A DNA stretch of 64,000 nucleotides from Guillardia theta CCMP2712 (taxonomy: Eukaryota; Protista; Cryptophyta): positions 444,575 to 508,574 of the forward strand of contig NW_005434629.1 of assembly GCF_000315625.1 (NCBI RefSeq), given 5' to 3'. How positions within the stretch are numbered: position 1 is the stretch's first letter; every line of letters starts with the position of its first letter. Below are positions 19,082-51,900 of the stretch, one piece after another. The notes below the pieces were generated by a model. That model saw nothing but the letters and a program-made list of their open reading frames with translations. It made no database searches and was not told the origin of the DNA. The position numbers were made by a program, and so were the translations under genes.

Positions 19082-19248
19082 AGGGGAAAGCGATAACAGG
19101 ATGGTAGAGAAATGTTTATGGATAGCAGAGCTAAGTTCACAAAGTCAAGAGGGAGGAAGAGGACGAGGCTCCACTTGTGATGTAGCAGCAGCAGCTCCGT
19201 TGCTGTGAGGAGCATAGCCCTTGAGGAAGAGACCTGAGGAGTTTAGAG

Positions 19249-22207
19249 TCAGGGAGAAAGAGGGAGAAGCATTTCAGGCGTACGATTGTTGACGAGCACC
19301 AACTCGCAGACACGAATGAAGAATTGTTTCCTGAGCTTGGAGGTCGTGAGCATCTTGTTCTCGCACGGGTCTCCGAGCTTCTCCTTCCTCGCCTTCTTCT
19401 GCAGCTCCTCAGTCAACTTGGTGGGGCTCAGCCCTCTGGGATGGTTCGCGACGATACCCAGGACAAGGTCACGGAAGGGGAGAAGCCCATCCAGGGCGGC
19501 ATGTCGGAGCTGCGCATGGGAGGGAGAGCTCTCCTGCGCCATCAGCTCTGTCGTTGAGCCGTCTGCGTCTTGCAGCTGATGGTCGTCTTGCCCATCTTTC
19601 TCGTCTCCCGCATGTTCCTTGTCCTCGTCCTCATCCTCTTGGTACCGGCCAAGGACTCCCGATGGGACGGCATGCAAGGGTCCTCGGACTTGTGCTCTCA
19701 CCCTCTTGTCTTGGCCATTCACTTGATTCCCCTTCGGCTGCGAGAGAGCAGATGAAGCAGCACCTGCTTCCTCCTCGTCCTCGTCCTCCTCCCCCGATTC
19801 GTCTTCCTCTCCACCCTCTTCACTCCCTGTGGCCATTGCGGCATCCTTCCCCTCAGCAAACCTTTTGATGCCTCCAGCCTTGACGATGGACTTGAGGAAG
19901 TTGAGGTCAGTTGAAATCGTCGCCGTCCTCGTCCCTTCCTCCTTACAGGTATAGGACTCGTGAGGTATCCTCCCCTTGCAGTGCATGTGCACCAGCTTCC
20001 GTTCCAGCGACGTCTGCAGGGAGGTGAACTCGAGCAGCGCCCTGGAGCCATTGACGGCTGCTGACTTGAACCAACCGACCACCCGCTTCACCGCATCCGA
20101 CTGGATGATCCTCGAGGCGGTGGCAGACTTGGCCGCGAGGATGTGGACGGTGAAGGGGGGGACGGCGACGGAGTAGACGGTGTTGATGGAGACATTCCCG
20201 GGTGCCGCCAGGGAAAGTTTGAACTTGTCGTCGCAGAGGAGCTGGAGAACGAGGTCGTCAGAGGAAGCAGCTGGTGAGCTGCTCTTCTCAGATACTATGA
20301 TCTGAGGGAGGTAGTCCTCCGTCTCCTCCACTGTCAGCTGGAACTCCAGCAAGTCCTTCTTGTGCCCGCTGCCTTCCAACCTCACGGGCTGGCGAGCCAG
20401 CACGGAGGACAGCAGCTGGCTCATCTCCTCCCTGCTCTTCTCGGGTGTGTGGAGGATCGCGTTGCTGATGCACTTGCGGATACGGTTGATCATGTCGAGC
20501 TCGGCCCAGGTGATGAAGTAGGGGTGCAGGTGGATGGCCCTGGCCCCAAGGAGGAAGGAAAGCACGCGCGTACCGTCGCTGCTCGTCCTCATGCTCATCT
20601 TCTCCGCTCTTGGGGTGAAAATCAGCTGCAGCAGCTTGCCGAAGGGAGTGCTGGGCAGCATCGTCACCCCAAGGGCCTTGACCCTCCTTTCGTTGTCGGT
20701 CCCCAGGAGGGACAGGGCCACTGCCACATGCTCAGTCTGCTCGCTGCTGAGGTCGCACACGACGGAGACAGGAGAGCGCCAGTAGGGCACGACGGACACG
20801 GTGGAATCGTTCATCAGGTTCCAGCTGACCATCGCGTCACAGCTCAGACTCCCAACGGTGACCGTCTCCGACCCTCCTGCTCCTGGCACTTCCCTGGGAT
20901 TCGGGAGGACGAGCTTGTAGCGGGAGGCCCAGTAGACCTGCCACAGCAGCTTTGCCTCGTGGCTCAAGTCCTTCACGAGCTCATCTGGGGCGCTCTGGGA
21001 GGAGGAGTAGAGCTGGGGGCCCCTCCCGAGCTGGATGACAGCTCCGTTGGACCCGACCATCTTGTAGTTGACGACCTGCACGTCAAGCACCCGCAGGAGG
21101 TTCTGGAGGCCAACCTTGGAGTTGAACTCGGGAGGAATTTTCTTGAGGCGCACCGAGCTCTCCCTCTCGAAGTTGGCCTTGACGATGTCCGACTTGTCCG
21201 ACTTGTCCAGCACTTGCCCCACAAGAAACGACTGCGAGCAGCAGCCGGCCAGAACGAACCTCAGGACGTCGTCGGGGGCCACGAAGAGCGAGCGGAGCGT
21301 CGCCTGCTGGCATGCCTCCTTCCTCCTCACGGTGTTGTGCAGCAGGTGCACCTTGTCTAGCGAGTCGTCCCTGAGGCCCTCGAGGCGCGCGAAGTACGTC
21401 TCGAACCTCCTGCAGAGGTCCAGCACCAGCGCCTCCATCTGCCTCACCCTAGTCCAGCTGAGCCCCAGGTTCATAGCATCGTGAAAGCCGCGGCCCGTCC
21501 TCATCCACTTCTTGTATCCCTCCAGGTACATAATCGGCTCCGATTTCTTCCCCAAATCGAGCCCAGCTCGGCTCCTGAAGTTGCTCGCCAGGTCCTTGAT
21601 GAAACGGGTCTGGTCGCGCATGAAGACGGGGGAGGGCATGGCGAAGATGTCCTGGATGGAGAGCGCGGCTGCCATGACGATCGACTCGGGAAGGCAGGAG
21701 CAGCTAGTCCCTAGCAGGAGGAGCTTGACGAGCGGGAGGTCTACAGGGAGGTCAGAGGCAAGTCGACCCAGCTCGGTGATAGCTGAGGTCTCGTCCTCGC
21801 GGGTCAGCGCACCGATCTTGAAGAGCTCCTTGATAGCTAAGTTGACTCGAGCTGAGGGAGGAGGGGTCAGAGACTGACTGAGGAGCGAGGAGGGGGAGCC
21901 GAACTGCTCCAGCAGGATCTTGATCTTGAGCACTGTCCTCTCGAGCGGCACGCGGAAGATTTCTGCCTCCTCGAAGGGGAGCATGACAGTGTCATGGAAG
22001 TCACGAGGGAAGAGGTGGAAGACGAAGCCAGGGGCGACCCTTCCTGCCCTCCCCTGACGCTGCTTGGCCGAGGACTGGGAGCACCATGCTCCTAGCAGCG
22101 CCGGCATGTTCCTGGTGTCGTCAAAGAAGATTCCCCTGAGAGGAAGGATGAGAATCGAGCGAAAGCAAGCTGAGGGGATGGTGAAAGATGATGACAAGGG
22201 CGGAGGA

Positions 22208-22244
<37 letters not shown>

Positions 22245-25200
22245 GAAAAGGGGACCAGGAGGCATGAGGGTAAGAGAACGAAGAGGAGAAGGAGGAGAAA
22301 GAGGAGAAGAAGGTGGTGGTGATGGAGATAATGGTGATAGTGATGATCATGCTTATGATGATACGATAATGATGAACATATCATAGGACATGCCTACCTG
22401 TGTAGGCCTGAGTCGATGACGTAGAGGACGTCGGGGATGGTGATGGAGCTCTCAGCGATGTTGGTCGACAAGATCACCTTGCAGTGCCCTGCTGTAGCCG
22501 GAAGCATCGCAGCCTCCTGCTCTTCCCGGGAGACGAGAGAGTGTAGGACGAGGATCTGAAGGGGGCAGGCGAAGGAGGAGAACTTCTCGAGCTCCTCTTG
22601 TAGAGACGCGATCTCTCCGATGCCGGGGAGGAAGATGAGGATGCAGATGCTGGGCTCTACAACCTCTGCAAGCAGCTTGATGATGAGCCTCTCAGAGTCT
22701 GAAGTCATCTGCATGAAAGCGAAATTAAGATGGTCGACTATGAAGAGACTAGCCTTGAACTCAGAAGCATTATCCTGCTCCTGCTCCTGCTCCTGCTCCT
22801 CCTCCTCACCATCATCATTATCATCATCCTCATCATCCTCATCCCATCCTGCTCCTGCTCCTGCTCCTCCTAATCATAATCATCATCTCACCTCAGGTTT
22901 GATCCTGGCTCCCTCGTTACTCTTAGATCCTTGGCAAGCAACCGCGAACTGCTTGGAGAGGCGGCCGAGACAGGCATCAGAGTTGAAGGAGCTACTGAAG
23001 TTTCGCCACTCATCCAAGAAGTACACCTCCACAGGGTATCTCCTCGCTCCCACGAAGATGGTGTCTCGAACTTGTTCGCTCTGAGGGGTGAAGTACTGCC
23101 CGAACAGGTTGGCCTGAAGGGTAGCTGACATGATCACCAACCTTGTGCTGGACTTCTGCGTCTGCGTCAGCTTCTTTATGAGCAAGTTGAGCAGGTCCGA
23201 GTCCATCCCCCTCTCGTGCACTTCGTCAAGGATGATGTGGGTGTACTTTGAGAAGTTCTCAGGGTGGTGGGAGAAGTACTGCAGGAGGTATCCTATGGTC
23301 ACAAAGGTGACACGAGTATCCTTGGAGACCACATGGTCCCCCTGGCCGATGCGGTAGCCTATCGTCTTTCCTATCTCCTCGTTGTTTTGACTCGCCACCC
23401 TCCTTGCGAGCGACACGGCTGCCAACCTGCGCGGCTGAGACACAATGACGTTAACTGGCCGGCGTCGCGCCCTGGCCTCGTCGAGGATGAACTGGGGGAC
23501 CATGGAGCTCTTCCCGCATCCTGTCTCTCCTTGGATGCATGTGACAGTGTGGTTGTTGATCTCTTCAAGGATGACGTCTCTGAACTGCACAATTGGGAGG
23601 GTGTTGGCAGCAAGCGCGACCTCCTGCTGCTCGGGGGTGAGATGAGGAGGAACGTCGCTGACAGGCTCCTCCACCCTCTCTTCTTGCAAAATTTCCTTGG
23701 TTGTTGCTGTTTGAGATCACAATCAGCTCGTGGGCTATAAAAGATAACATCGGAGAGGAGCTCTGATGTGCATGCAGACATCAGGAGCCATCGGGGGAGA
23801 GAGGGGGAGAAAACGTTGTTCATCAACATCTACGACTGACCTGTTTCGATCATGTGGATGTTGTTGAAGAGTTGGAAATCTTCTTCAAAGATCGTCAGCA
23901 CAGCATCGCACAACATGTCGATCTCGTAATGAGGAATTTGCTTCAGCACGCCCTCAAGATGTCCGCTGCTTGACGGATCTTGGGAATGAAGATGGAGAAA
24001 CAATCTACAACACCATAGTCAACTATCTCTCTTACGTACGGTCCAAACATGCACGACACAATTCTCCCCCTTCCCCTCCCCCTCCCCCTCCTCAGTCTTA
24101 TCTGGCATAACCAGACCTGGCACTGAACAGTTTGCTAGGCTCCGGAAAGAGATGAGAAATTTCCAAGAGCTCAGCCAGGTGAAAGACTTCATGGACGACA
24201 TTCTGGAAGAAATTCGCCACCTCGACGGTGGCGAAACTGAACAAAACAAGAAATCAGGTGTGAGAGTTTGTGAAGAAAAGGAGGGCGGGAACTGAGGGAG
24301 AGGAGAGAGATAAGGAGACGAAGAGGAGGATAAGAATATGACGTAGTTGCATTGAAGATCAACAGGGAGCAAGAGTAGCAGGATGGGGGAAGAAGAGGAG
24401 GGAAAGAGGAGCAGGAGCAAGAGAAGGAGAAGGAGAAGGAGAGAGTATGAAGTCGATGCAAACCTGGGGGGATGCACTGGAAGCTCATCAAAATCGAAAT
24501 CGCAGCAGCACATGAACACGCAGGCCTTGAGTGTGTGATAGTCCCAGACGGTGAAGTGGAACTGCCCGCCGTTTAACCTTGAAGGAAAGTCGAACGTGAG
24601 GAGGAGGAAAAGCAAGGAGTGGGGAGAATGATTGTCTGATGGNNNNNNNNNNNNNNNNNNNNNNNNNNNNNNNNNNNNNNNNNNNNNNNNNNNNNNNNNN
24701 NNNNNNNNNNNNNNNNNNNNNNNNNNNNNNNNNNNNNNNNNNTCTCTCTCTCTCTCTCCTCCCTCCCTCCCTCCCCTCCCCCCCCCCCCCCCCCCTCTTC
24801 TCTTCTTTCTATAATCAAGAGTGTTCATACCTCGTTGTTGCGAATGGGGATGCCAAGTCTTTTGATGATATCATATCTTTCACAACAGTCACAACCATCT
24901 TCTTCATCGGAATCGAGTCACGTCTCACTTTTGTACAACGTCTCGTGTCATATCGTTGGAGCAAAGAGCAGCAAACTCCCAAAGTCTGCGATGGCACACA
25001 CGTTCAGACCCAACAATCACAAAGAACAGAGAGCAACCGATCAGGCTTCAGTCGGAGGAACGAAGCTAACTTCTCAGAAGTGAACACCCGGGCATACAAC
25101 TGTATCGCAACCCTCTTTTAGTCCTCAGTAATGCAAGGGGAGGAAATTACCATGTCGCCCTTCACCTCCATGAAATTTAAGGGCGTGTAATGGATTCCGG

Positions 25201-26104
25201 GCATAACGTTGAAATCAGAGTCGTTTGCAACGACGAACGTCCTTGTGTCCGACGATCGGCAGATCAACCAGATGTCTATATCTGCCTCCATCAGGCTCGT
25301 GCGGACCTCTGCCCCACACTTGCGCAGGGTAGCGATGGCTTGATTCTTAGCAAGACATGGCGACTGCCAGGCTTGACGTAACGCATTCTGTCACCAAGAA
25401 CATCAGCATTCCTCCCTCTTCCACTCTCACTGATCGCACTCTACCTCTGACAGAGAGGATGGGTCCTTGTTGTTCTGTATGTACGAGACGATCTGGTCCA
25501 TGTTCTCGCTCCTGTCTGCAAACCTGACGGACATGCACTCGTCAGCCACGAGGAGGGAGGGGTCGATCAGCAGGTAGCACCTCCTCTCATGCTCCCTCCT
25601 CTTCATCTCCGGCCCTTCGGTCCCCCGCGCTGGATCGAAAACCACCAGAACGTCCACCTCGCATCGCTGCAAATTCCCCACCAGGTCTTGGAGCTCTGCA
25701 GGGGAGGAGCTGAGAAACGAAGCTGAGCACGCCTCTCACCTGTAGCAAACATCTTGTAGTCGCCCCCAAGGATCCACTGCCATGTTGGGCAGAGCTCTAA
25801 GAGGCCGCAAGTCAGCCAATGGCGCCAGCGGGACACGGGTCGTTACTCTGAAATACGTGATGGATAAGAAAGAAGCCGTCTATGATCAGCAGCGGTTTCT
25901 TGCCCCCCTGCCGCATCGCTCAGCCCTCAGCATGCGACATGGTCGTCTTGCTCACCTTCCCCGTCCTCTCCCTCGACATCTCGGTTAGGCTATGGCAGGC
26001 AGTTAGCGCTTCCCCTCCTCCTCCCCACCTCCAACTTACTTCACGAGCTCCGAGAGCTCTTCGGCCTTGGACGAGCATAGCGTCTGGAGGCCTCTGACGC
26101 CCAT
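19249..26104 (-). CDS. Fusion protein: Asteroid/FAM120-like (XPG/FEN-type PIN) nuclease + Spindle-E/TDRD9-like DEAH helicase + R3H + LOTUS-like tail
   Basis: Hand-spliced N-terminus: MGVRGLQ, LLIIDG, WILGGDY, VLVVFD, MEAD, VANDSDF, LWEFAALCSND, then LAELLE..PEPSKLFSARLF. An in-frame phase-1 intron (23840-23707) leads into GETGCGKS, QPRRLAA, DEVHER, MSAT, FLPG, STNIAESSITIPDV and QRQGRAGR, then an HA2 region, ERKLVH..HESY (R3H) and a C-terminal LVLGIVANHPRGLS. An N gap at 24643-24742 hides some exons. Confidence 0.85.
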
Positions 26105-45942: not shown

Positions 45943-48900
45943 ATGTCCGAAGCTAGCCACAAGGACAGCGAGCAAGTGGCCCTGGATCAAGCAGGAAACG
46001 AGAATGGCGATGCTGAGAAGAGGAAGCGAAAGAGAGAGGGGGGAGACGTGAAGAATCAAGCCCAGACCATGACGAGGCCTCCCAGCCGCAGAAGAAAGTT
46101 ATGAGCGTCAAGGTGATGTGCTCAATAAGCGGCACCCTCTGACAGCTCTATCAGGGACAAGGAGCTCAATGCTTTGAAGAAGGCAAGCGAGAGCCAAATG
46201 AGGATGAAAAATCTCGGATGCTTGCTCGAGATGTCAGTGGAGATCGTCAGAATGTGCGTGAATGCTTGAGCCGTCTTCCTGTCAGTGCACAGTCCCTAAA
46301 CTCACTTGGTAGGGGGACACGGAAGGCACTCTTGCTTCTGCCGCCGAACAAGGTAACGCTGTTATGTGCTTGATGCAGCACGGCATGGTTGACTAACTCA
46401 GCAGCAGGTGGCAAAGGATCGAAGTTTGGGATCCTGCATGCCCAAGATGGAATGGCAGAGACAGGTGCAAGTCAATTCTGATCAATCAAAGTGCAGACGC
46501 GATGTTGACTTGCAGTCTCAGATGAAGGTGCTGAGAGCGATTCCCAAAACAAGACCCTGGATGAGTCGTTGCCAATGTCAGAATCCGCACTGTCATTATC
46601 CCAGGATTCCCAGGGGGTTGTTGATGTGACGACAAGCAGCTTCGGGCTGCGTTACCGCATCGAGGAACAACTTCAGAAGATGCCTCTCAGCGTTGATACA
46701 GATTTCGGGCAGATCACCATCTACTCGTTTGGCGCGATCGTTTTTGACGTGGAGGGATACTGGAATGCAAATCACATCTTCCCTGTAGGTTATTCGGGAA
46801 TCCACACCCTCGTTACTGCGCAGGAAGATCCTGCCAAGATTACTTTCTTCTTTGAGATACGATATGATGGTGCTGGCCTGGGGAACACACCGCTGTTTGT
46901 AGTGTCTCCTCAATCCGTTCCACATGAGTTTTCCTCCGCTGACGCCGACGATGCGTGGAAACAAGCTCTGGATGAGACGAAAGCGACTTGGCCTTGGGAA
47001 TCGGCGGCGATGCCTCCTGGTCCAGCGCTCTTCGGGTTGACCTGCGAGAAGATCAGGGAGAGAATCAACAGCATGCCTGGGAGTAGCCTCTGTCATGTTG
47101 GCTCTAGCCTGCACAAGGCTCGTCGCAGTGCCTTCCTTGAAGCCTCTCGTAGTCTCAAGGATGTAAAGAAGGGAAAAGATGCAGACAGTAGGAAATCAAG
47201 GGATGGAGACAGCCAGGATAAGGACAAGGGCACCAAGAAAGAATCAAGGGAAGAACGCAACCGCCGCAAGGAGGAGGCAAAGAAATCCAGGCTTATGGAA
47301 CGAGAGCGATTGAGGAAAGAGAGGTTGAAGCAGAAACAGCAGGAGAAAGATCACCTGAATGAACTCAAGGAGAAGCAGAAACTAGAAGCGCAAAAGAGGA
47401 AGGATCAAGAGAAAGAGATCGTCAAGGACCTGCGAGAAAAGAGGCAAGCAGAGATAGAGAAAGCCAAGGAGGAGAGGAGGATCGCGGTTGAAAACTATAG
47501 AGAGATGGAGAAGAAAATTAGAGAGCAGCAGCGTCTGGCAAAAGTTCTTGAATTGAGACAGTCGGTGATGGAGGACCTGGAGTTGATGAACCTCAGGAAG
47601 TTTGAGAACCCCGAAGACAGCAAACCCATCAAGGACTGGTCGGAGCAGATTTTTGTCGAGCCCTCAGACAGGAAAGACATCCTGGAGTCAGAGAAACCGT
47701 GCCCGACCTTGCCTGAGCAGCACACCAGCGCGATCATTGAGATCTGGGAGTTTGTCAACATGTTCTCGGAGAGGTTGTGTTGTAAGAAAATGCCGTGGTC
47801 GGAGTTTTCGGAAGCGATCATGGATGAATGCTGTCTGGTCTTTCATGGCCTACATGTCCAACTTGTGAACATGATCTATCATGACTTGCCAGCTGCCGAC
47901 CATCCTTTCCGTGGACGGCCGTTGAACAGTCTGACCTGGCCAGAATTGTTTCGTCAGTACTTGCTAATGGTGCGCCAAGAGTACAAGGATGAAGAACTGG
48001 ATGAGCTGGCTACAAAGCTGCGCCTGCATGAGATGCAATTGTCTCTGGAGCACGAGCGGTACGAAGACCTTCCGTTTGATACCAGAATCCTGCTTCTTTC
48101 CTTCAACATGAACCTGGCCATGGAGACGCACACGATCCGCAACATGATCGACGAGCGCATCGAGAAGCATGCGTCTCTCCAGTATGAGAAGCGACAAGAA
48201 TTCTATCAGCTAGCAAGAGATAGCCGAGAAGGCAAATCGACATTTGGAGACCGCAAGGACGAGTTGCCGTTGCACACGATCGAAGAAGTTGAGAGTGCAG
48301 TCATGGAGCTTCAGGACATTCTGACAGACGCGGTTTCGGATCCCGACGGTTCGTACGGTCCAGGTCTTTGGCCGACCGTGTCACTGGAAGCCATTGAAGT
48401 TATACGGGCCTCGGCGAGGATCTTGTTGGGATGCTTGGCGAGCGGAGAGTGCAGTTTCAAGTCATGCGATGCGATCAGGCGATCGTACATTCACGACCTC
48501 TCAAGTCGGATGGTGAACTCAGTGGAGAAGAACGGGAACAGGTGGCATGAGGAGTGGAAGACTCTGCTCAACAACTCCTTGGATCAAGTGCTGGGGACGC
48601 AGCCGTCGAGCCGACTCCCTGAAATCTTTGAGAACCTTGCAAACTTATACGAGCCTGAACCGACAGAGTCCGAGTATGTTGACAAGAACGGCTCAGAGGG
48701 CACGGAAAGGATGCAGGTTGGAGGAAAGACGATCTATGGGCTGTCAAATAGGGGCGCAAACCCTGAAGATGACGATCATGATGATGCTGAGGATGATGAA
48801 GAAGAGTATGATGAAGAATCCGAGGAAAGCGATGATGCCCACGACAACGATGAGGAGGGAGATAATGACGACGACGATGACGACGATGACGATGCTGAAG

Positions 48901-51900
48901 ACAATCATCACAATGAGGAAGAAGATGAAGATGCGAACGATGATGATGCTGACGACGACGACGACGACGACGACGGCGATGAGGAGGATAGAAAGGAAAG
49001 TCTGCGGGAGTCAGGCAAGAAGCAGCATCGGGGCATACCACAGACAGACGGGCTGGACATCTTTCATTGCCTCTCACAAGTCGATGGTGCAGAGGATGAG
49101 GGGTCGTCGTTTCATCTCGGGTCTGACGACCAGGAATCTAATTTCTCCAATAGAAACTCCCCTACTGGCCTTGAGACCAGTGAGCTCGCCAGCCCAAGTC
49201 AAGGCAAGAAGGCCAAACAATCTCAGCCGAAAAAAGATGTCAAAGGATCCGACGGTGCCAAGAAGAAAGCAGGCGACTCATCTGAAAAGAAACCTGCCAA
49301 GAAACCTTCTCAGAAACAACCGGCTGGCCCGAAACGTCCACAGCCGGCTTTCTTCCACTACTGCAACGCAGTGCGAGATCAAGTCAAGCTCGAAAACCCT
49401 TCGTGCTCGTTTGGCGAGCTGTCGAAGCTGATCGGAAAGAAGTGGTCGGAGCTTCCTGCAGCAGACAAGGTCAAGTACGTCGACATGGAGGAGAAGGACA
49501 GAGAGAGGTACAGCGCAGAGATGAAGTCGACCATGTTGGGAGGGAGCCCCCCTGCGAAGGCATCCAAGTCGACGATCAAAACGGAGAAAGACAGTGAGTT
49601 GCCTGAAGACACGCTGATGACCCTAGAGGACGACAGCGAGTCTGACACGTCATCACCGAGCGCAAACCAGGACGCGAGCGAAAGCGAGCACAGAGCCAAA
49701 GGAGGGCACGTGGGGGCTGATGGCAAGAACTCCAAGGGCTCCAGTGTCAGGATCACTGTCATCCCGATGAGAAAGGCGAGCATGAACGCGAGCAGTAGGA
49801 AAGGAGCCTCGAGGAAGATCCGCAAGGGAGAGGAGCCTGTTGACTGGATCCAGTGCGACTCGTGCAATACCTGGCGATTCTTCTACCCCGGGCTTGCCCC
49901 GAACACTGTGACTGAAGCGTGGAACTGCAAGCAGGCAAAGAGAGAATGCGGTCAGTTGAGAATGGAAGAAGAGTTCATGAAGGACTGGACTGACATGATG
50001 AAGAACGACAACCAGGCAACTTGTTATAAGTTTGTCCTCGAGGGCGTCACGTTTGTTGTCTACGAGCTGTACTGGTCGGTGATCTCCCTCGGAGGGTCCA
50101 GCGCTGTCTCCAAGTGGAAGGACGTCGGCAACGACATGATGTGGCGGAAGAAGGGTGTGCTCGTGAGCAAGACCCCAGGGAAGAACTACGGGCTGATCAA
50201 GAATCAGTGGGAGCGATGGCAGCTATCAAAGTTCGAGGAGCTCTACTCGTCCAAACCCGTGCCGGAGGAGTACCTTGCCCCTGCTGTGGATCCCAAGAGG
50301 AAGGACAAGGACAAGGAGACTGCTGCTATCCACTCTCCCCTTAGCATCGACGCACCCAACTCCAACTCCAAGAAAGAGGCTCCGTGGAAGGGAAGGAAGA
50401 TGTGGCCAAGGAAAGAGATCAGCTTCCCGGCGGAGACAGGCTCTCCTGTCCCCTTTGAAAGCACCAGCCCCATTCCTTCGATGGAGTCTCCAGTCATCCA
50501 GGCACAGCTCCCCCCTCTGCCTGTCTATAACCCTCTTCCTCCTCTCCCCGAGCTGACCTACGACGACAAGCTGCACCTGCGCATGAACGAGAGCGTCTCC
50601 TTCGCGCGAGGGCTGCGGGTGGACGGCGAAGTCTCCGTCAAGAAGGCCAACGACGTGATATGGAGGACGAGGCTCGAGGCCGTGAAGCTGCGCGACGAGC
50701 CGCTGGGGCAGGATCGCTTCTTCAACCGCTACTGGGTGCTCAACGACGACTTCTCCAGGATCTGGGTGCAGAGGGTCAACTCGGAGCACGGGCTGGAGTC
50801 CTCGTGGGGGGCATACACGACCATCGAGGAGGTAGACAAGCTAATAGGGCTCCTCGACCCCCACGGCATGCGCGAGAACAACCTGAAGGAGGTGGGGCAG
50901 AGGCGCTGATGCTGATGTGTGCTGACCGGCTTGCAGTCGTTGGAAGCCTACCGGGATGACTTCAATCGTGCGATGCACAAGAAGGAGGAGGGAGGAGGAG
51001 CATCCAAGTCGCAGGAGGAGGATCCTGACCTGCAAGAGCTCAAAGTCACGCACGACAGCATCAGCACCAAGGCCGCTCACTTCCTGGTTGTGGAGAACAA
51101 GTCCAAGTTCGAGCACGCTCTCAAGATCAAGTTCCACCAGTCAGTTTTCGGCCTGTCGCACGGGAGTGAGATGCAGGTGTGATGTCGTCGGGATGCCAGG
51201 GGAAGCGTCTGGTTGACCCGATGCGCAGGAGATGAGGAGGGTGTTCGCTATCCCCGCGGAGATTTGTACAGAGGAAGCGGGAAAGGTCAGACCAGCTCGA
51301 GGAGTTTTCAACCTCTGAATAGCTGCAGATTCATATCTGTGAGAATCTCCGCAAGCTCAAAGGAGATGCGCTGACTATCCACATGGTCCTCGATCCTCCT
51401 CCTCTCCCTCCTGCTGACTCACTTCGCAGGCGATCTCGGAGCTGCATGGCGGCGAGCTGAGCTTCGGCGACTTGTCAAGGAGGGAGTGGATGGCGACGGT
51501 GAGCTCTTCTTGTGCTCGAGAGCATGCGGCAGCTCACGAGTCTTCACCTCGCAGCTCAGGGATGCGGCGAGTGCTCAAGAGATGGAGCCTATCATAGAGC
51601 TGCTCATCGAGTCAGGTCAGTCTGCCTCCATCCGCTCCCCCCACCTTCCCCTCCACTCCCTTCCTCTCCTCTCCTCTCCCTCCTCCTCCTCCCTGCTTTT
51701 CCTCTCCCTACTTGCCCATCCCCTTCCCCTTCTTTCGTCGATGCATCTGACGTCAAAGCTAGTCAACTCCTGCTGGTTGCATCCTTGGTTTTCCCACATC
51801 CCCAGGTGAGCCGCGTGCTGCGCCTTTTCCCTCGCTCGCTCGCTCGCTCGCTCCTCCCCACCTCCCCTCTCCCCCTTTTCACACTCGCCGGCTCTCATCT

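What the first reader, a model, noticed from the sequence alone, without database searches (positions are those of the whole stretch)
19249..26104. Asteroid/XPG-type 5' nuclease fused to a Spindle-E/TDRD9-like helicase with R3H and LOTUS-like domains: candidate single-chain RNA-silencing machine
SEEN: the ORF track shows only helicase pieces. Hand-splicing the small upstream exons (26104 to 23841, GT-AG, phases consistent on each side of the N gap) gives MGVRGLQ (26104), LLIIDG (25875-25880), WILGGDY, VLVVFD, EAD (25280-25288), NDSDF (25211-25225), FAALCSND (24952-24960) and LAELL..PEPSKLFSARLF. The last of these exons ends ...ACA G|GT (23841) and joins CAG|CA ACA (23706) in frame into the helicase, with no stop. 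KNOWN: MG(I/V)xGL, DG, EAD, DSD and GND are the acidic metal-binding motifs of FEN1/XPG-like PIN nucleases, with GGDY/GGQW typical of ASTE1/FAM120. The helicase segments VPLERTVLKIKIL..SLTPP, LPVDLPLVKLLLLG..CLPESIVMAAALS and VRLKKIPP..LQNLL recall TDRD9/Spindle-E, a piRNA-pathway helicase, more than generic DHX proteins. INFERENCE: the protein has an apparently intact nuclease active site, a 3'-5' RNA helicase and RNA-binding modules, but no Tudor domain. It could unwind and cleave transposon or viral RNA, or R-loops. I know of no described protein with this architecture.
Basis: partly seen in the sequence, partly recalled or inferred. Interest (0 to 1): 0.92.

Follow-up and report, generated by a model that had tools for sequence, protein, structure and literature searches.

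The report
Asteroid-type nuclease fused to TDRD9-like helicase
This Guillardia theta gene joins a FEN1/XPG-type (Asteroid/FAM120-like) nuclease to a helicase related to the piRNA helicase TDRD9. The same fusion exists, unstudied, in many branches of eukaryotes, so it is a real but uncharacterised enzyme family.

Summary
On the minus strand, 15 GT-AG exons (26104 to 19249) encode one protein. It has an N-terminal XPG/FEN-type nuclease with all seven metal-binding carboxylates, then a DExH helicase with motifs I-VI.

The fusion is real. A paralog on another contig has the same exon order and the same intron at the nuclease/helicase junction. About 50 fetched proteins start with this nuclease and continue into this helicase. 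They come from oomycetes, diatoms, Cyanophora, Andalucia, Euglena, Thecamonas, choanoflagellates and a sponge, and several are transcript-derived.

A folded homolog matches full-length ASTE1, FAM120B and Mkt1. In trees the helicase family is sister to TDRD9.

Corrections:
- There is one extra 57-nt intron.
- The assembly gap hides about 220 codons of the Asteroid-like module.

R3H is unproven and LOTUS is unsupported. No Piwi domain was detected in this genome, so the RNA-silencing role stays speculative.

No paper describing the fusion was found, and the current annotation holds only a 192-aa fragment. The scan noted a similar fusion elsewhere in this genome (s1-441329), probably the paralog.

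The parts
26045..26104 (-). Exon 1: start codon, MGVRGL... (start of the XPG_N-like part)
   Evidence: model; matches family profile positions 1-20. Homologs start with MGVRGL at residue 1.
25847..25907 (-). Exon 2: LLIIDG, first catalytic Asp (D30)
   Evidence: D in 32 of 34 family members.
25740..25796 (-). Exon 3: WILGGDY (the GG motif also seen in ASTE1/FAM120; that part is recalled from memory)
   Evidence: G51 and G52 conserved in 27 and 30 of 34.
25581..25695 (-). Exon 4a: VLVVFD (D80) and a basic segment, KRREHERR (K91, R98)
   Evidence: D 31/34, K 28/34, R 31/34.
25445..25523 (-).
   Evidence: the paralog has a stop in the equivalent stretch..
25151..25387 (-). Exon 5: I-region with EAD (E158, D160) and NDSDF (D180, D182)
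   Evidence: (66 bits for this exon alone); 62% identical paralogous exon on C221.
25038..25099 (-). Exon 6
24929..24985 (-). Exon 7: FAALCSND, seventh carboxylate (D235), H2TH/H3TH region
   Evidence: (aligns with LGSDYT of Rad2).
24831..24876 (-). Exon 8, the last exon before the gap; ends in phase 0
24643..24742 (.). Assembly gap that most likely hides about 220 codons (the middle of the Asteroid-like module)
   Evidence: profile positions of about 266-485 are missing; the paralog has 1.7 kb here, with an exon matching profile 295-359; the missing exon is not elsewhere in the assembly.
24464..24577 (-). Exon 9, the first exon after the gap (LNGGQFHFTVWDY...). The acceptor at 24577 is inferred from conservation.
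   Evidence: (colinear with P0209).
24117..24236 (-). Exon 10: ...LAELLEISHLFPEPSKLFSAR, a conserved end segment of the Asteroid-like module
   Evidence: 79% identical in the paralog; profile 522-560.
23841..24004 (-). Exon 11: linker ending ...IHMIET G|GT
   Evidence: (same intron position in the paralog).
22892..23706 (-). Exon 12: linker plus helicase RecA1 (GETGCGKS 23530-23507, DEVHER 23227-23210, SAT). No Met before motif I.
   Evidence: (DEAD, 46 bits).
22398..22708 (-). Exon 13: first part of RecA2 (FLPG, TNIAESSITI)
   Evidence: Helicase_C; annotated fragment P0062 crosses the exon 13/14 junction exactly.
19249..22135 (-). Exon 14. It holds the rest of RecA2 (QRQGRAGR 22062-22039), the HA2 winged helix and ratchet, a family-specific C-terminal region, an R3H-like motif (20037-19912), an acidic linker and an unassigned C-terminal tail (19482-19252). 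The stop is at 19249-19251; one more short 3' exon is possible.

Best explanation
This is one real protein-coding gene of Guillardia theta (contig C45, minus strand, 15 visible exons plus exons hidden in the assembly gap; about 1,950 aa when complete). It belongs to an old, widespread and unstudied eukaryotic family.

In that family a complete Asteroid/FAM120/Mkt1-class XPG-like module forms the first 450-930 residues. This module is a PIN-like 5' nuclease core plus a long helical C-terminal half. It is followed in the same chain by a DExH (DEAH/RHA-type) helicase that is the sister group of TDRD9/Spindle-E. Lineage-specific nucleic-acid or ribosome-related tails follow the helicase.

Shown here: the exon structure, the fusion, the fold class, the intact catalytic residues of both enzymes, and the position in the tree.

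Inferred: the protein works as a helicase-nuclease. The DExH motor would load on a 3' single strand and translocate 3'->5', unwinding structured RNA, or an RNA:DNA or DNA duplex. The freed 5' end or flap would pass through the basic gateway of the FEN-like domain and be cut by two-metal catalysis. RNA is the more likely substrate, judging by the helicase clade and the accessory domains, but DNA or R-loops are not excluded.
For: Gene model: all GT-AG, no internal stop. Pre-gap exons match the family profile at 197 and 204 bits, colinear from residue 1, and exon by exon in order.

Fusion:
- The paralog on C221 has the same order and the same intron at IHMIET|ATT, with coding conservation up to both splice sites.
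- Exon 12 has no Met before motif I.
- P0209 is a single 397-aa ORF colinear with exons 9-12 across the junction.
- 50 fetched proteins have the nuclease at residue 1 and the helicase downstream. They include transcript-derived ORFs of Salpingoeca urceolata, Diaphanoeca grandis and Euglena gracilis, and gene models of Phytophthora, Lagenidium, Aphanomyces, Nitzschia, Cyanophora, Andalucia, Thecamonas and Sycon.

Nuclease:
- The family profile hits Rad2, FEN1 and EXO1 structures at E 1e-10 to 1e-8.
- Pfam XPG_I_2 hits 9 of 12 members and XPG_I 8 of 12.
- The AF2 model of a homolog (pLDDT 78) matches EXO1/FEN1 in the PDB. It matches full-length ASTE1 (TM 0.68/0.72 over 540 residues), FAM120B and Mkt1 in the Atlas.
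- D30, D80, E158, D160, D180, D182, D235, K91 and R98 are present in the window and conserved in 28-33 of 34 members.

Helicase:
- Pfam DEAD, Helicase_C, HA2_N and HA2_C; motifs I-VI intact.
- The family is a clade at 100/100, and the clade with TDRD9 has 100/99 support.

Expression: runs guessed to be RNA hold 0.77-0.78 of the words of 19249-24640, where exons make up 0.82, against 0.95 for the best DNA run. This is weak evidence.
Against: - No reads could be laid on this locus.
- The middle of the nuclease module is unsequenced (gap). This copy could therefore lack it.
- Single exons of the window do not reach Pfam thresholds on their own.
- The sister position to TDRD9 rests on two TDRD9 sequences, one of them partial, and both groups have long branches. 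The AU test does not reject the alternative (p 0.067).
- Nothing tested here shows substrate, polarity or activity.
- Relatives of the nuclease module include non-catalytic RNA-binding proteins (Mkt1, FAM120A; PMC12345631).
Confidence: 0.8

Rival explanations
1. Two neighbouring genes. An Asteroid-like nuclease gene ends near 23841, and a separate helicase gene begins downstream. The continuous ORF is an artefact of hand-splicing.
For: If intron 11 is retained, the frame stops four codons later (...IETGQS*), so a nuclease-only isoform is possible. The current annotation has only fragments. There are no read data for this locus.
Against: Exon 12 has no Met before helicase motif I. The paralog keeps the same intron, with coding conservation on both sides. 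P0209 is one ORF across the junction. 50 homologs from many lineages, several from transcriptomes, are single fused ORFs.
Confidence: 0.04
2. The window's copy is a decaying or truncated paralog. The gap is short, the middle of the Asteroid-like module is really missing, and only the C221 copy is functional.
For: About 220 profile positions are absent. The missing exon of the paralog has no second copy anywhere in the assembly. With the conserved acceptor the phases do not match across the gap.
Against: All 15 visible exons are open, with intact splice sites and intact catalytic and helicase motifs. The gap is one of five placeholders of exactly 100 N and is flanked by simple repeats that typically break assemblies. 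Runs guessed to be RNA hold most exon words.
Confidence: 0.1
3. The XPG-like module does not act as a nuclease. It is an RNA- or protein-binding platform, as in Mkt1 and FAM120A, so the protein is an RNP-remodelling helicase with a docking domain.
For: The closest structural relatives include Mkt1 and FAM120 proteins. These act in post-transcriptional regulation and are not established nucleases (PMC12345631, PMC7026591).
Against: All seven carboxylates and the two gateway basic residues are present here and conserved in 28-33 of 34 family members. That conservation is not expected for a domain that has lost catalysis. ASTE1 and FAM120B of the same class are reported to have nuclease activity (cited in PMC12345631).
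Confidence: 0.15
4. It is a DNA-repair or R-loop enzyme, not an RNA-silencing factor. It would be an ASTE1-like structure-specific DNA endonuclease coupled to a helicase that opens DNA or RNA:DNA hybrids.
For: ASTE1 is reported to act in DNA double-strand-break repair (Zhao et al. 2021, cited in PMC12345631). The best solved-structure matches are the DNA enzymes EXO1, FEN1 and Rad2. No Piwi domain was detected in this genome.
Against: The helicase clade is sister to TDRD9, which from general knowledge is an RNA helicase of the piRNA pathway. Accessory tails in relatives point to RNA or the ribosome (SUI1 in P0055; WW in P0254 and P0259). None of this is decisive.
Confidence: 0.3

Closest known systems
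ASTE1 (protein asteroid homolog 1) and the Asteroid/FAM120/Mkt1 class of the Rad2/XPG family
   Same: The PIN-like XPG core has the MG(V/I)RGL start, DG, GG, D, EAD, DSDF and GND motifs. It is followed by a long helical C-terminal half. The AF2 model of a family member superposes on full-length ASTE1 (TM 0.68/0.72, 540 residues), FAM120B (0.70/0.67) and Mkt1 (0.66/0.61). Pfam XPG_I_2 hits 9 of 12 members.
   Different: ASTE1, FAM120 and Mkt1 are stand-alone proteins without a helicase. Here the whole module is the N-terminal third of a roughly 1,750-3,450-aa helicase protein. In the window the middle of the module is unsequenced. I could not build a tree of the module against ASTE1, FAM120 and Mkt1.
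TDRD9 / Spindle-E (piRNA-pathway DExH helicase)
   Same: The helicase cores form a clade with 100/99 support, apart from DHX29, DHX57, DHX36, DHX9/MLE and YTHDC2. Neither group has a Pfam OB_NTP_bind hit in the precomputed domain lists. Automatic annotation names several members spindle-E or TDRD9.
   Different: There is no Tudor domain, and there is an N-terminal nuclease that TDRD9 lacks. The family is a sister clade, not nested within TDRD9. The AU test gives p 0.067. It occurs in lineages, and in a genome, with no detectable Piwi.
FEN1 / EXO1 / XPG (Rad2) structure-specific 5' nucleases
   Same: The fold and the seven-carboxylate two-metal site are shared. The profile hits Rad2, FEN1 and EXO1 at E 1e-10 to 1e-8, and Foldseek hits EXO1 at E 2e-6.
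   Different: Sequence identity is only 12-16%. The C-terminal half is different. No PCNA motif was tested. The module is fused to a helicase.
Other helicase-nuclease single chains: bacterial PhoH2 (PIN + PhoH RNA helicase; mentioned in PMC5499597) and Dna2 (from general knowledge)
   Same: The design principle is shared: a motor that exposes a single strand, linked to a nuclease that cuts it.
   Different: The domain families are unrelated (a VapC-type PIN with PhoH; a PD-(D/E)XK nuclease with an SF1 helicase). The domain order and the taxa also differ. This is an analogy only.

Membership tests
Rad2/XPG (FEN-like) PIN-domain nucleases | Significant profile similarity to XPG_N/XPG_I | tested here: met
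   The family profile hits Rad2, FEN1 and EXO1 chains at E 1.8e-10 to 1e-8. Pfam XPG_I scores up to 43 bits in homologs. The window's spliced exons match the family profile at 197 bits. The window's single exons alone give no Pfam hit.
Rad2/XPG (FEN-like) PIN-domain nucleases | Seven conserved acidic metal ligands plus gateway Lys/Arg | tested here: met
   D30, D80, E158, D160, D180, D182, D235, K91 and R98 are present in the window and conserved in 28-33 of 34 members. Equivalence to FEN1 D34, D86, E158, E160, D179, D181, D233, K93 and R100 rests on the Rad2 alignment and on general knowledge.
Rad2/XPG (FEN-like) PIN-domain nucleases | FEN-like fold | tested here: met
   The AF2 model of homolog P0085:1-720 (pLDDT 78, pTM 0.79) gives EXO1, FEN1, Rad2 and T5 exonuclease as top PDB matches. 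This was tested on a homolog, not on the window's own chain.
Asteroid/FAM120/Mkt1 class | PIN-like core followed by the class-specific long C-terminal half | tested here: inconclusive
   Met for the family. The homolog model aligns over residues 1-624 with full-length ASTE1, FAM120B and Mkt1, and the feature search gives FAM120 and Asteroid clusters at 0.94-0.96. For the window only the core (profile 1-265) and the end (about 485-576) are visible; the middle lies in the gap.
Asteroid/FAM120/Mkt1 class | Pfam XPG_I_2 (PF12813) above the gathering score | tested here: inconclusive
   9 of 12 homologs match at E<=1, best 9.7e-8. P0131 scores 22.2 bits, below the 24.2 cut-off. The window's exons give no hit.
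DEAH/RHA (DExH) helicases | Motifs I, Ia, II (DEVH), III (SAT), IV, V and VI, plus HA2 winged helix and ratchet | tested here: met
   Pfam DEAD 46 bits, Helicase_C 41.7, HA2_N 25.6, HA2_C 22.8.
DEAH/RHA (DExH) helicases | C-terminal OB fold (PF07717) | tested here: not met
   No PF07717 hit in the window or in family members. The two TDRD9 sequences also lack this hit. The fold itself was not tested.
TDRD9 / Spindle-E | Helicase core inside the TDRD9 clade | tested here: inconclusive
   It is sister to TDRD9, not nested within it. The joint clade has 100/99 support and 97-98 SH-aLRT. The AU test of the alternative gives p 0.067. Only two TDRD9 sequences were available.
TDRD9 / Spindle-E | Tudor domain C-terminal to the helicase | tested here: not met
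   No PF00567 hit in the window's exon 14 or in family members. The C-terminal parts of the two TDRD9s match no other fetched protein.
R3H domain | Pfam PF01424 or profile similarity to known R3H | tested here: not met
   No hit at E<=10. hhalign against the N-terminal, R3H-bearing parts of P0046 and P0031 gives probability 0.1%. The R-x3-H motif (ERKLVH) and its spacing are present in the window and in P0052, but not in the paralog or in P0081. The predicted strand-helix-strand-strand-helix order comes from a model with pLDDT 44.
LOTUS / OST-HTH | Pfam PF12872 or any detectable similarity | tested here: not met
   No Pfam hit at E<=10. No usable Atlas hit. No counterpart in the paralog region searched.

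The most novel reading that the evidence does not exclude
The fusion is a 'Rosetta stone'. The last eukaryotic common ancestor would have had a single-chain Asteroid-type nuclease plus TDRD9-type helicase, acting as a Piwi-independent unwind-and-cut enzyme against structured or foreign RNA. In most animals its two halves would survive as separate proteins, ASTE1/FAM120 and TDRD9/Spindle-E. That predicts a so far unrecognised functional partnership between those proteins in small-RNA pathways. FAM120A is already reported to associate with Ago2, and Mkt1 is required for RNAi in fission yeast.
Probability: 0.15. Interest if true: 0.85.

Novelty: new variant of a known kind. Interest (0 to 1): 0.62.

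Why it matters
- It defines a conserved, pan-eukaryotic, apparently unstudied enzyme family: an Asteroid-class XPG-like nuclease covalently joined to the closest relatives of the TDRD9/Spindle-E helicase.
- It gives a testable idea of what the poorly understood Asteroid/FAM120/Mkt1 class and TDRD9 do at the molecular level, namely coupled unwinding and 5'-end or flap cleavage.
- It raises the question of whether TDRD9 descends from a nuclease-helicase.
- It shows that the current Guillardia theta annotation holds only 170-192-aa fragments of two roughly 1,900-aa genes.
- Culturable hosts that carry the family, such as Phytophthora and diatoms, could be used for genetic tests.

Tried and rejected
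- **Pfam on single N-terminal exons** gave nothing. XPG_I searched in the whole genome finds four other XPG-type loci but not this gene.
- **First homolog search** with exon 14 was swamped by generic DEAH helicases.
- **The look-up of encoding contigs for P0062** found nothing. P0062 turned out to be the annotated partial model GUITHDRAFT_54409, so it is not independent RNA evidence.
- **R3H.** The fold of the repeated C-terminal module had pLDDT 44 and was not used for fold search. hhalign against the N-terminal parts of two R3H-bearing proteins was negative.
- **LOTUS** was negative in Pfam and the Atlas.
- **AU test** on 49 rows did not finish. It was repeated on 24 rows.
- **mafft --add --keeplength** misaligned the window's row. 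I replaced it with hmmalign.
- **Tandem Repeats Finder** missed the 576-nt repeats of the paralog. The repeat finder found them.
- **The paralog's hidden-region exon** was searched in the whole assembly and only the paralog itself matched.


Full report
**Organism and locus.** The window is contig C45:444575-508574 of an 87.1-Mb assembly in 669 contigs. Annotated fragments of the gene and of its paralog are named GUITHDRAFT_54409 and GUITHDRAFT_60737 of Guillardia theta CCMP2712. The current annotation holds only 192 aa and 170 aa of these two genes.

**Observation.** Reading the minus strand and splicing by script gives exons that all have GT-AG borders and no internal stop. Most introns are 44-57 nt.

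Four corrections were needed:
- Exon 1 ends at 26045.
- A further 57-nt intron lies at 25524-25580. The paralog has a stop codon there.
- The conserved LNGGQFH puts the first post-gap acceptor at 24577.
- With that acceptor, exon 8 (phase 0) cannot join exon 9 directly.

**The gap.** A profile of the family's N-terminal region has 690 positions. The window's pre-gap exons cover positions 1-265 (204 bits). The post-gap exons start at about position 485. Exon-by-exon matches are in the right order in both the window and the paralog. In the paralog the equivalent interval is 1.7 kb and holds at least one exon that matches profile positions 295-359. That exon has no second copy in the assembly. 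Five gaps in the window are exactly 100 N, so I take the length as a placeholder.

My conclusion is that both sides of the gap belong to the same gene and that the gap most likely hides about 220 codons. A misjoin is unlikely, because only two loci in the genome carry the nuclease exon and each also carries the helicase.

**Is the fusion real?** No reads could be laid. The evidence is therefore comparative:
- The paralog on C221 has the same order of parts and an intron at exactly the same place (IHMIET|ATT). Protein conservation runs up to both splice sites.
- Exon 12 has no methionine before helicase motif I.
- P0209, a single 397-aa ORF on a JGI contig, is colinear with exons 9-12 across the junction at 40% identity.
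- An exhaustive HMMER search with exon 14 and a word-index search recovered proteins of 1,380-3,455 aa. In 50 of them the XPG-like domain starts at residue 1 and the helicase starts at residue 340-930.
- These proteins come from Phytophthora, Lagenidium, Aphanomyces and other oomycetes, Nitzschia, Aureococcus, Cyanophora (two copies), Andalucia godoyi, Euglena gracilis, Thecamonas trahens, Papus, the choanoflagellates Salpingoeca urceolata and Diaphanoeca grandis, and the sponge Sycon ciliatum.
- Several are complete ORFs from transcriptomes, so the fusion is present in mRNA of other species.

As weak support for expression in this species, runs guessed to be RNA hold 0.77-0.78 of the sampled words of 19249-24640. 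Exons make up 0.82 of that stretch, and the best DNA run holds 0.95.

**The nuclease module.**
- A 12-sequence profile of the family's N-termini hits Rad2, FEN1, EXO1, GEN1 and XPG structures, best E 1.8e-10.
- Pfam XPG_I_2 matches 9 of 12 members and XPG_I matches 8 of 12.
- The window's spliced pre-gap protein matches the profile over its whole length.
- All seven acidic ligands (D30, D80, E158, D160, D180, D182, D235) and two basic gateway residues (K91, R98) are present. They are conserved in 28-33 of 34 members.
- An AF2 model of Salpingoeca residues 1-720, built with a 34-sequence alignment, has pLDDT 78 and pTM 0.79. Its best PDB matches are EXO1, FEN1 and Rad2.
- Residues 1-624 of that model superpose on full-length ASTE1 (TM 0.68/0.72), FAM120B (0.70/0.67) and Mkt1 (0.66/0.61) models. 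This agrees with a language-model feature search.

The N-terminal third is therefore a whole Asteroid/FAM120/Mkt1-class module. That class was recently proposed within the Rad2/XPG family (PMC12345631).

**The helicase.** Pfam finds DEAD, Helicase_C, HA2_N and HA2_C, and motifs I-VI are intact. In maximum-likelihood trees of the core (LG+C20), the fused family, which includes dinoflagellate proteins auto-named spn-E, is a clade at 100/100. It is sister to two Tudor-bearing TDRD9 sequences at 100/99. Both lie apart from DHX29, DHX57, DHX36, DHX9/MLE and YTHDC2. The AU test of the alternative placement gives p 0.067. TDRD9 sampling is thin and the branches are long. I therefore call the family 'TDRD9-like, sister family' and not a TDRD9 ortholog. 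No Tudor domain is present.

**The C-terminal parts.** The region after the ratchet is conserved in the family up to about residue 630 of exon 14.

It is conserved in a JGI metagenomic fragment (P0052), in Hanusia phi (P0081) and in the paralog, where the module is repeated. However, Pfam and hhalign give no support, and the fold was of low confidence. R3H is therefore unproven.

The 'LOTUS-like' tail has no support.

Relatives carry other tails: SUI1 in P0055 and WW in P0254 and P0259.

**Function.** The architecture, the catalytic residues and the clade are shown. The rest is inferred: a 3'->5' DExH motor that unwinds structured RNA or hybrids and hands a 5' end or flap to the FEN-like site. 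RNA against DNA is open. A six-frame search finds no Piwi domain in this genome. It finds only a weak PAZ in an 883-aa ORF. A piRNA-like role is therefore not supported here.

**Novelty.** Four full-text searches and two papers read gave no description of this fusion. The 2017 PIN-domain catalogue lists Asteroid as of unknown function, and its passages on Asteroid and on helicases that I read do not mention this fusion. Databases do hold many members, as hypothetical or auto-named proteins. The scan holds another first-reader note on the same genome with a very similar title (s1-441329). It is probably the C221 paralog that I examined.

Noticed in passing
G000:C221:33227-36294 (L003:228-3295), minus strand: The paralog's 3' part carries five to six tandem copies of a 576-nt (192-codon) unit, 92-100% identical. 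The unit encodes the same R3H-like module that is single-copy in the window. This looks like a recent in-frame expansion.
   Followed up: partly
G000:C54:418957-421605 (L008:1958-4606, +): This 883-aa open frame has a weak PAZ domain (22.6 bits, below the cut-off) and weak Argonaute N-half look-alikes (0.79). It has no detectable Piwi domain. PF02171 (Piwi) gives no six-frame match anywhere in this genome.
   Followed up: partly
window 19249-26104 and G000:C221: The public annotation covers these two roughly 1,900-aa genes only as partial models of 192 aa (GUITHDRAFT_54409) and 170 aa (GUITHDRAFT_60737).
   Followed up: yes
The stretch was not sent to any search tool afterwards.
   Followed up: no
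P0055 (991 aa), P0254 and P0259: Relatives of the helicase carry other C-terminal modules: SUI1/eIF1 (28 bits) in P0055, and WW in P0254 and P0259. The tail of the family is therefore lineage-specific and looks RNA- or translation-related.
   Followed up: no
window 19140-19290: A possible extra 3' intron (donor AAT C|GTACGC, acceptor ...CTCCTCAG|) would replace the last 11 codons with about 29 others, ending at a TGA near 19146. Nothing available here decides between the two ends.
   Followed up: no
window 46509-50906 (+): A 1,466-codon open frame, the longest in the window, was not examined.
   Followed up: no
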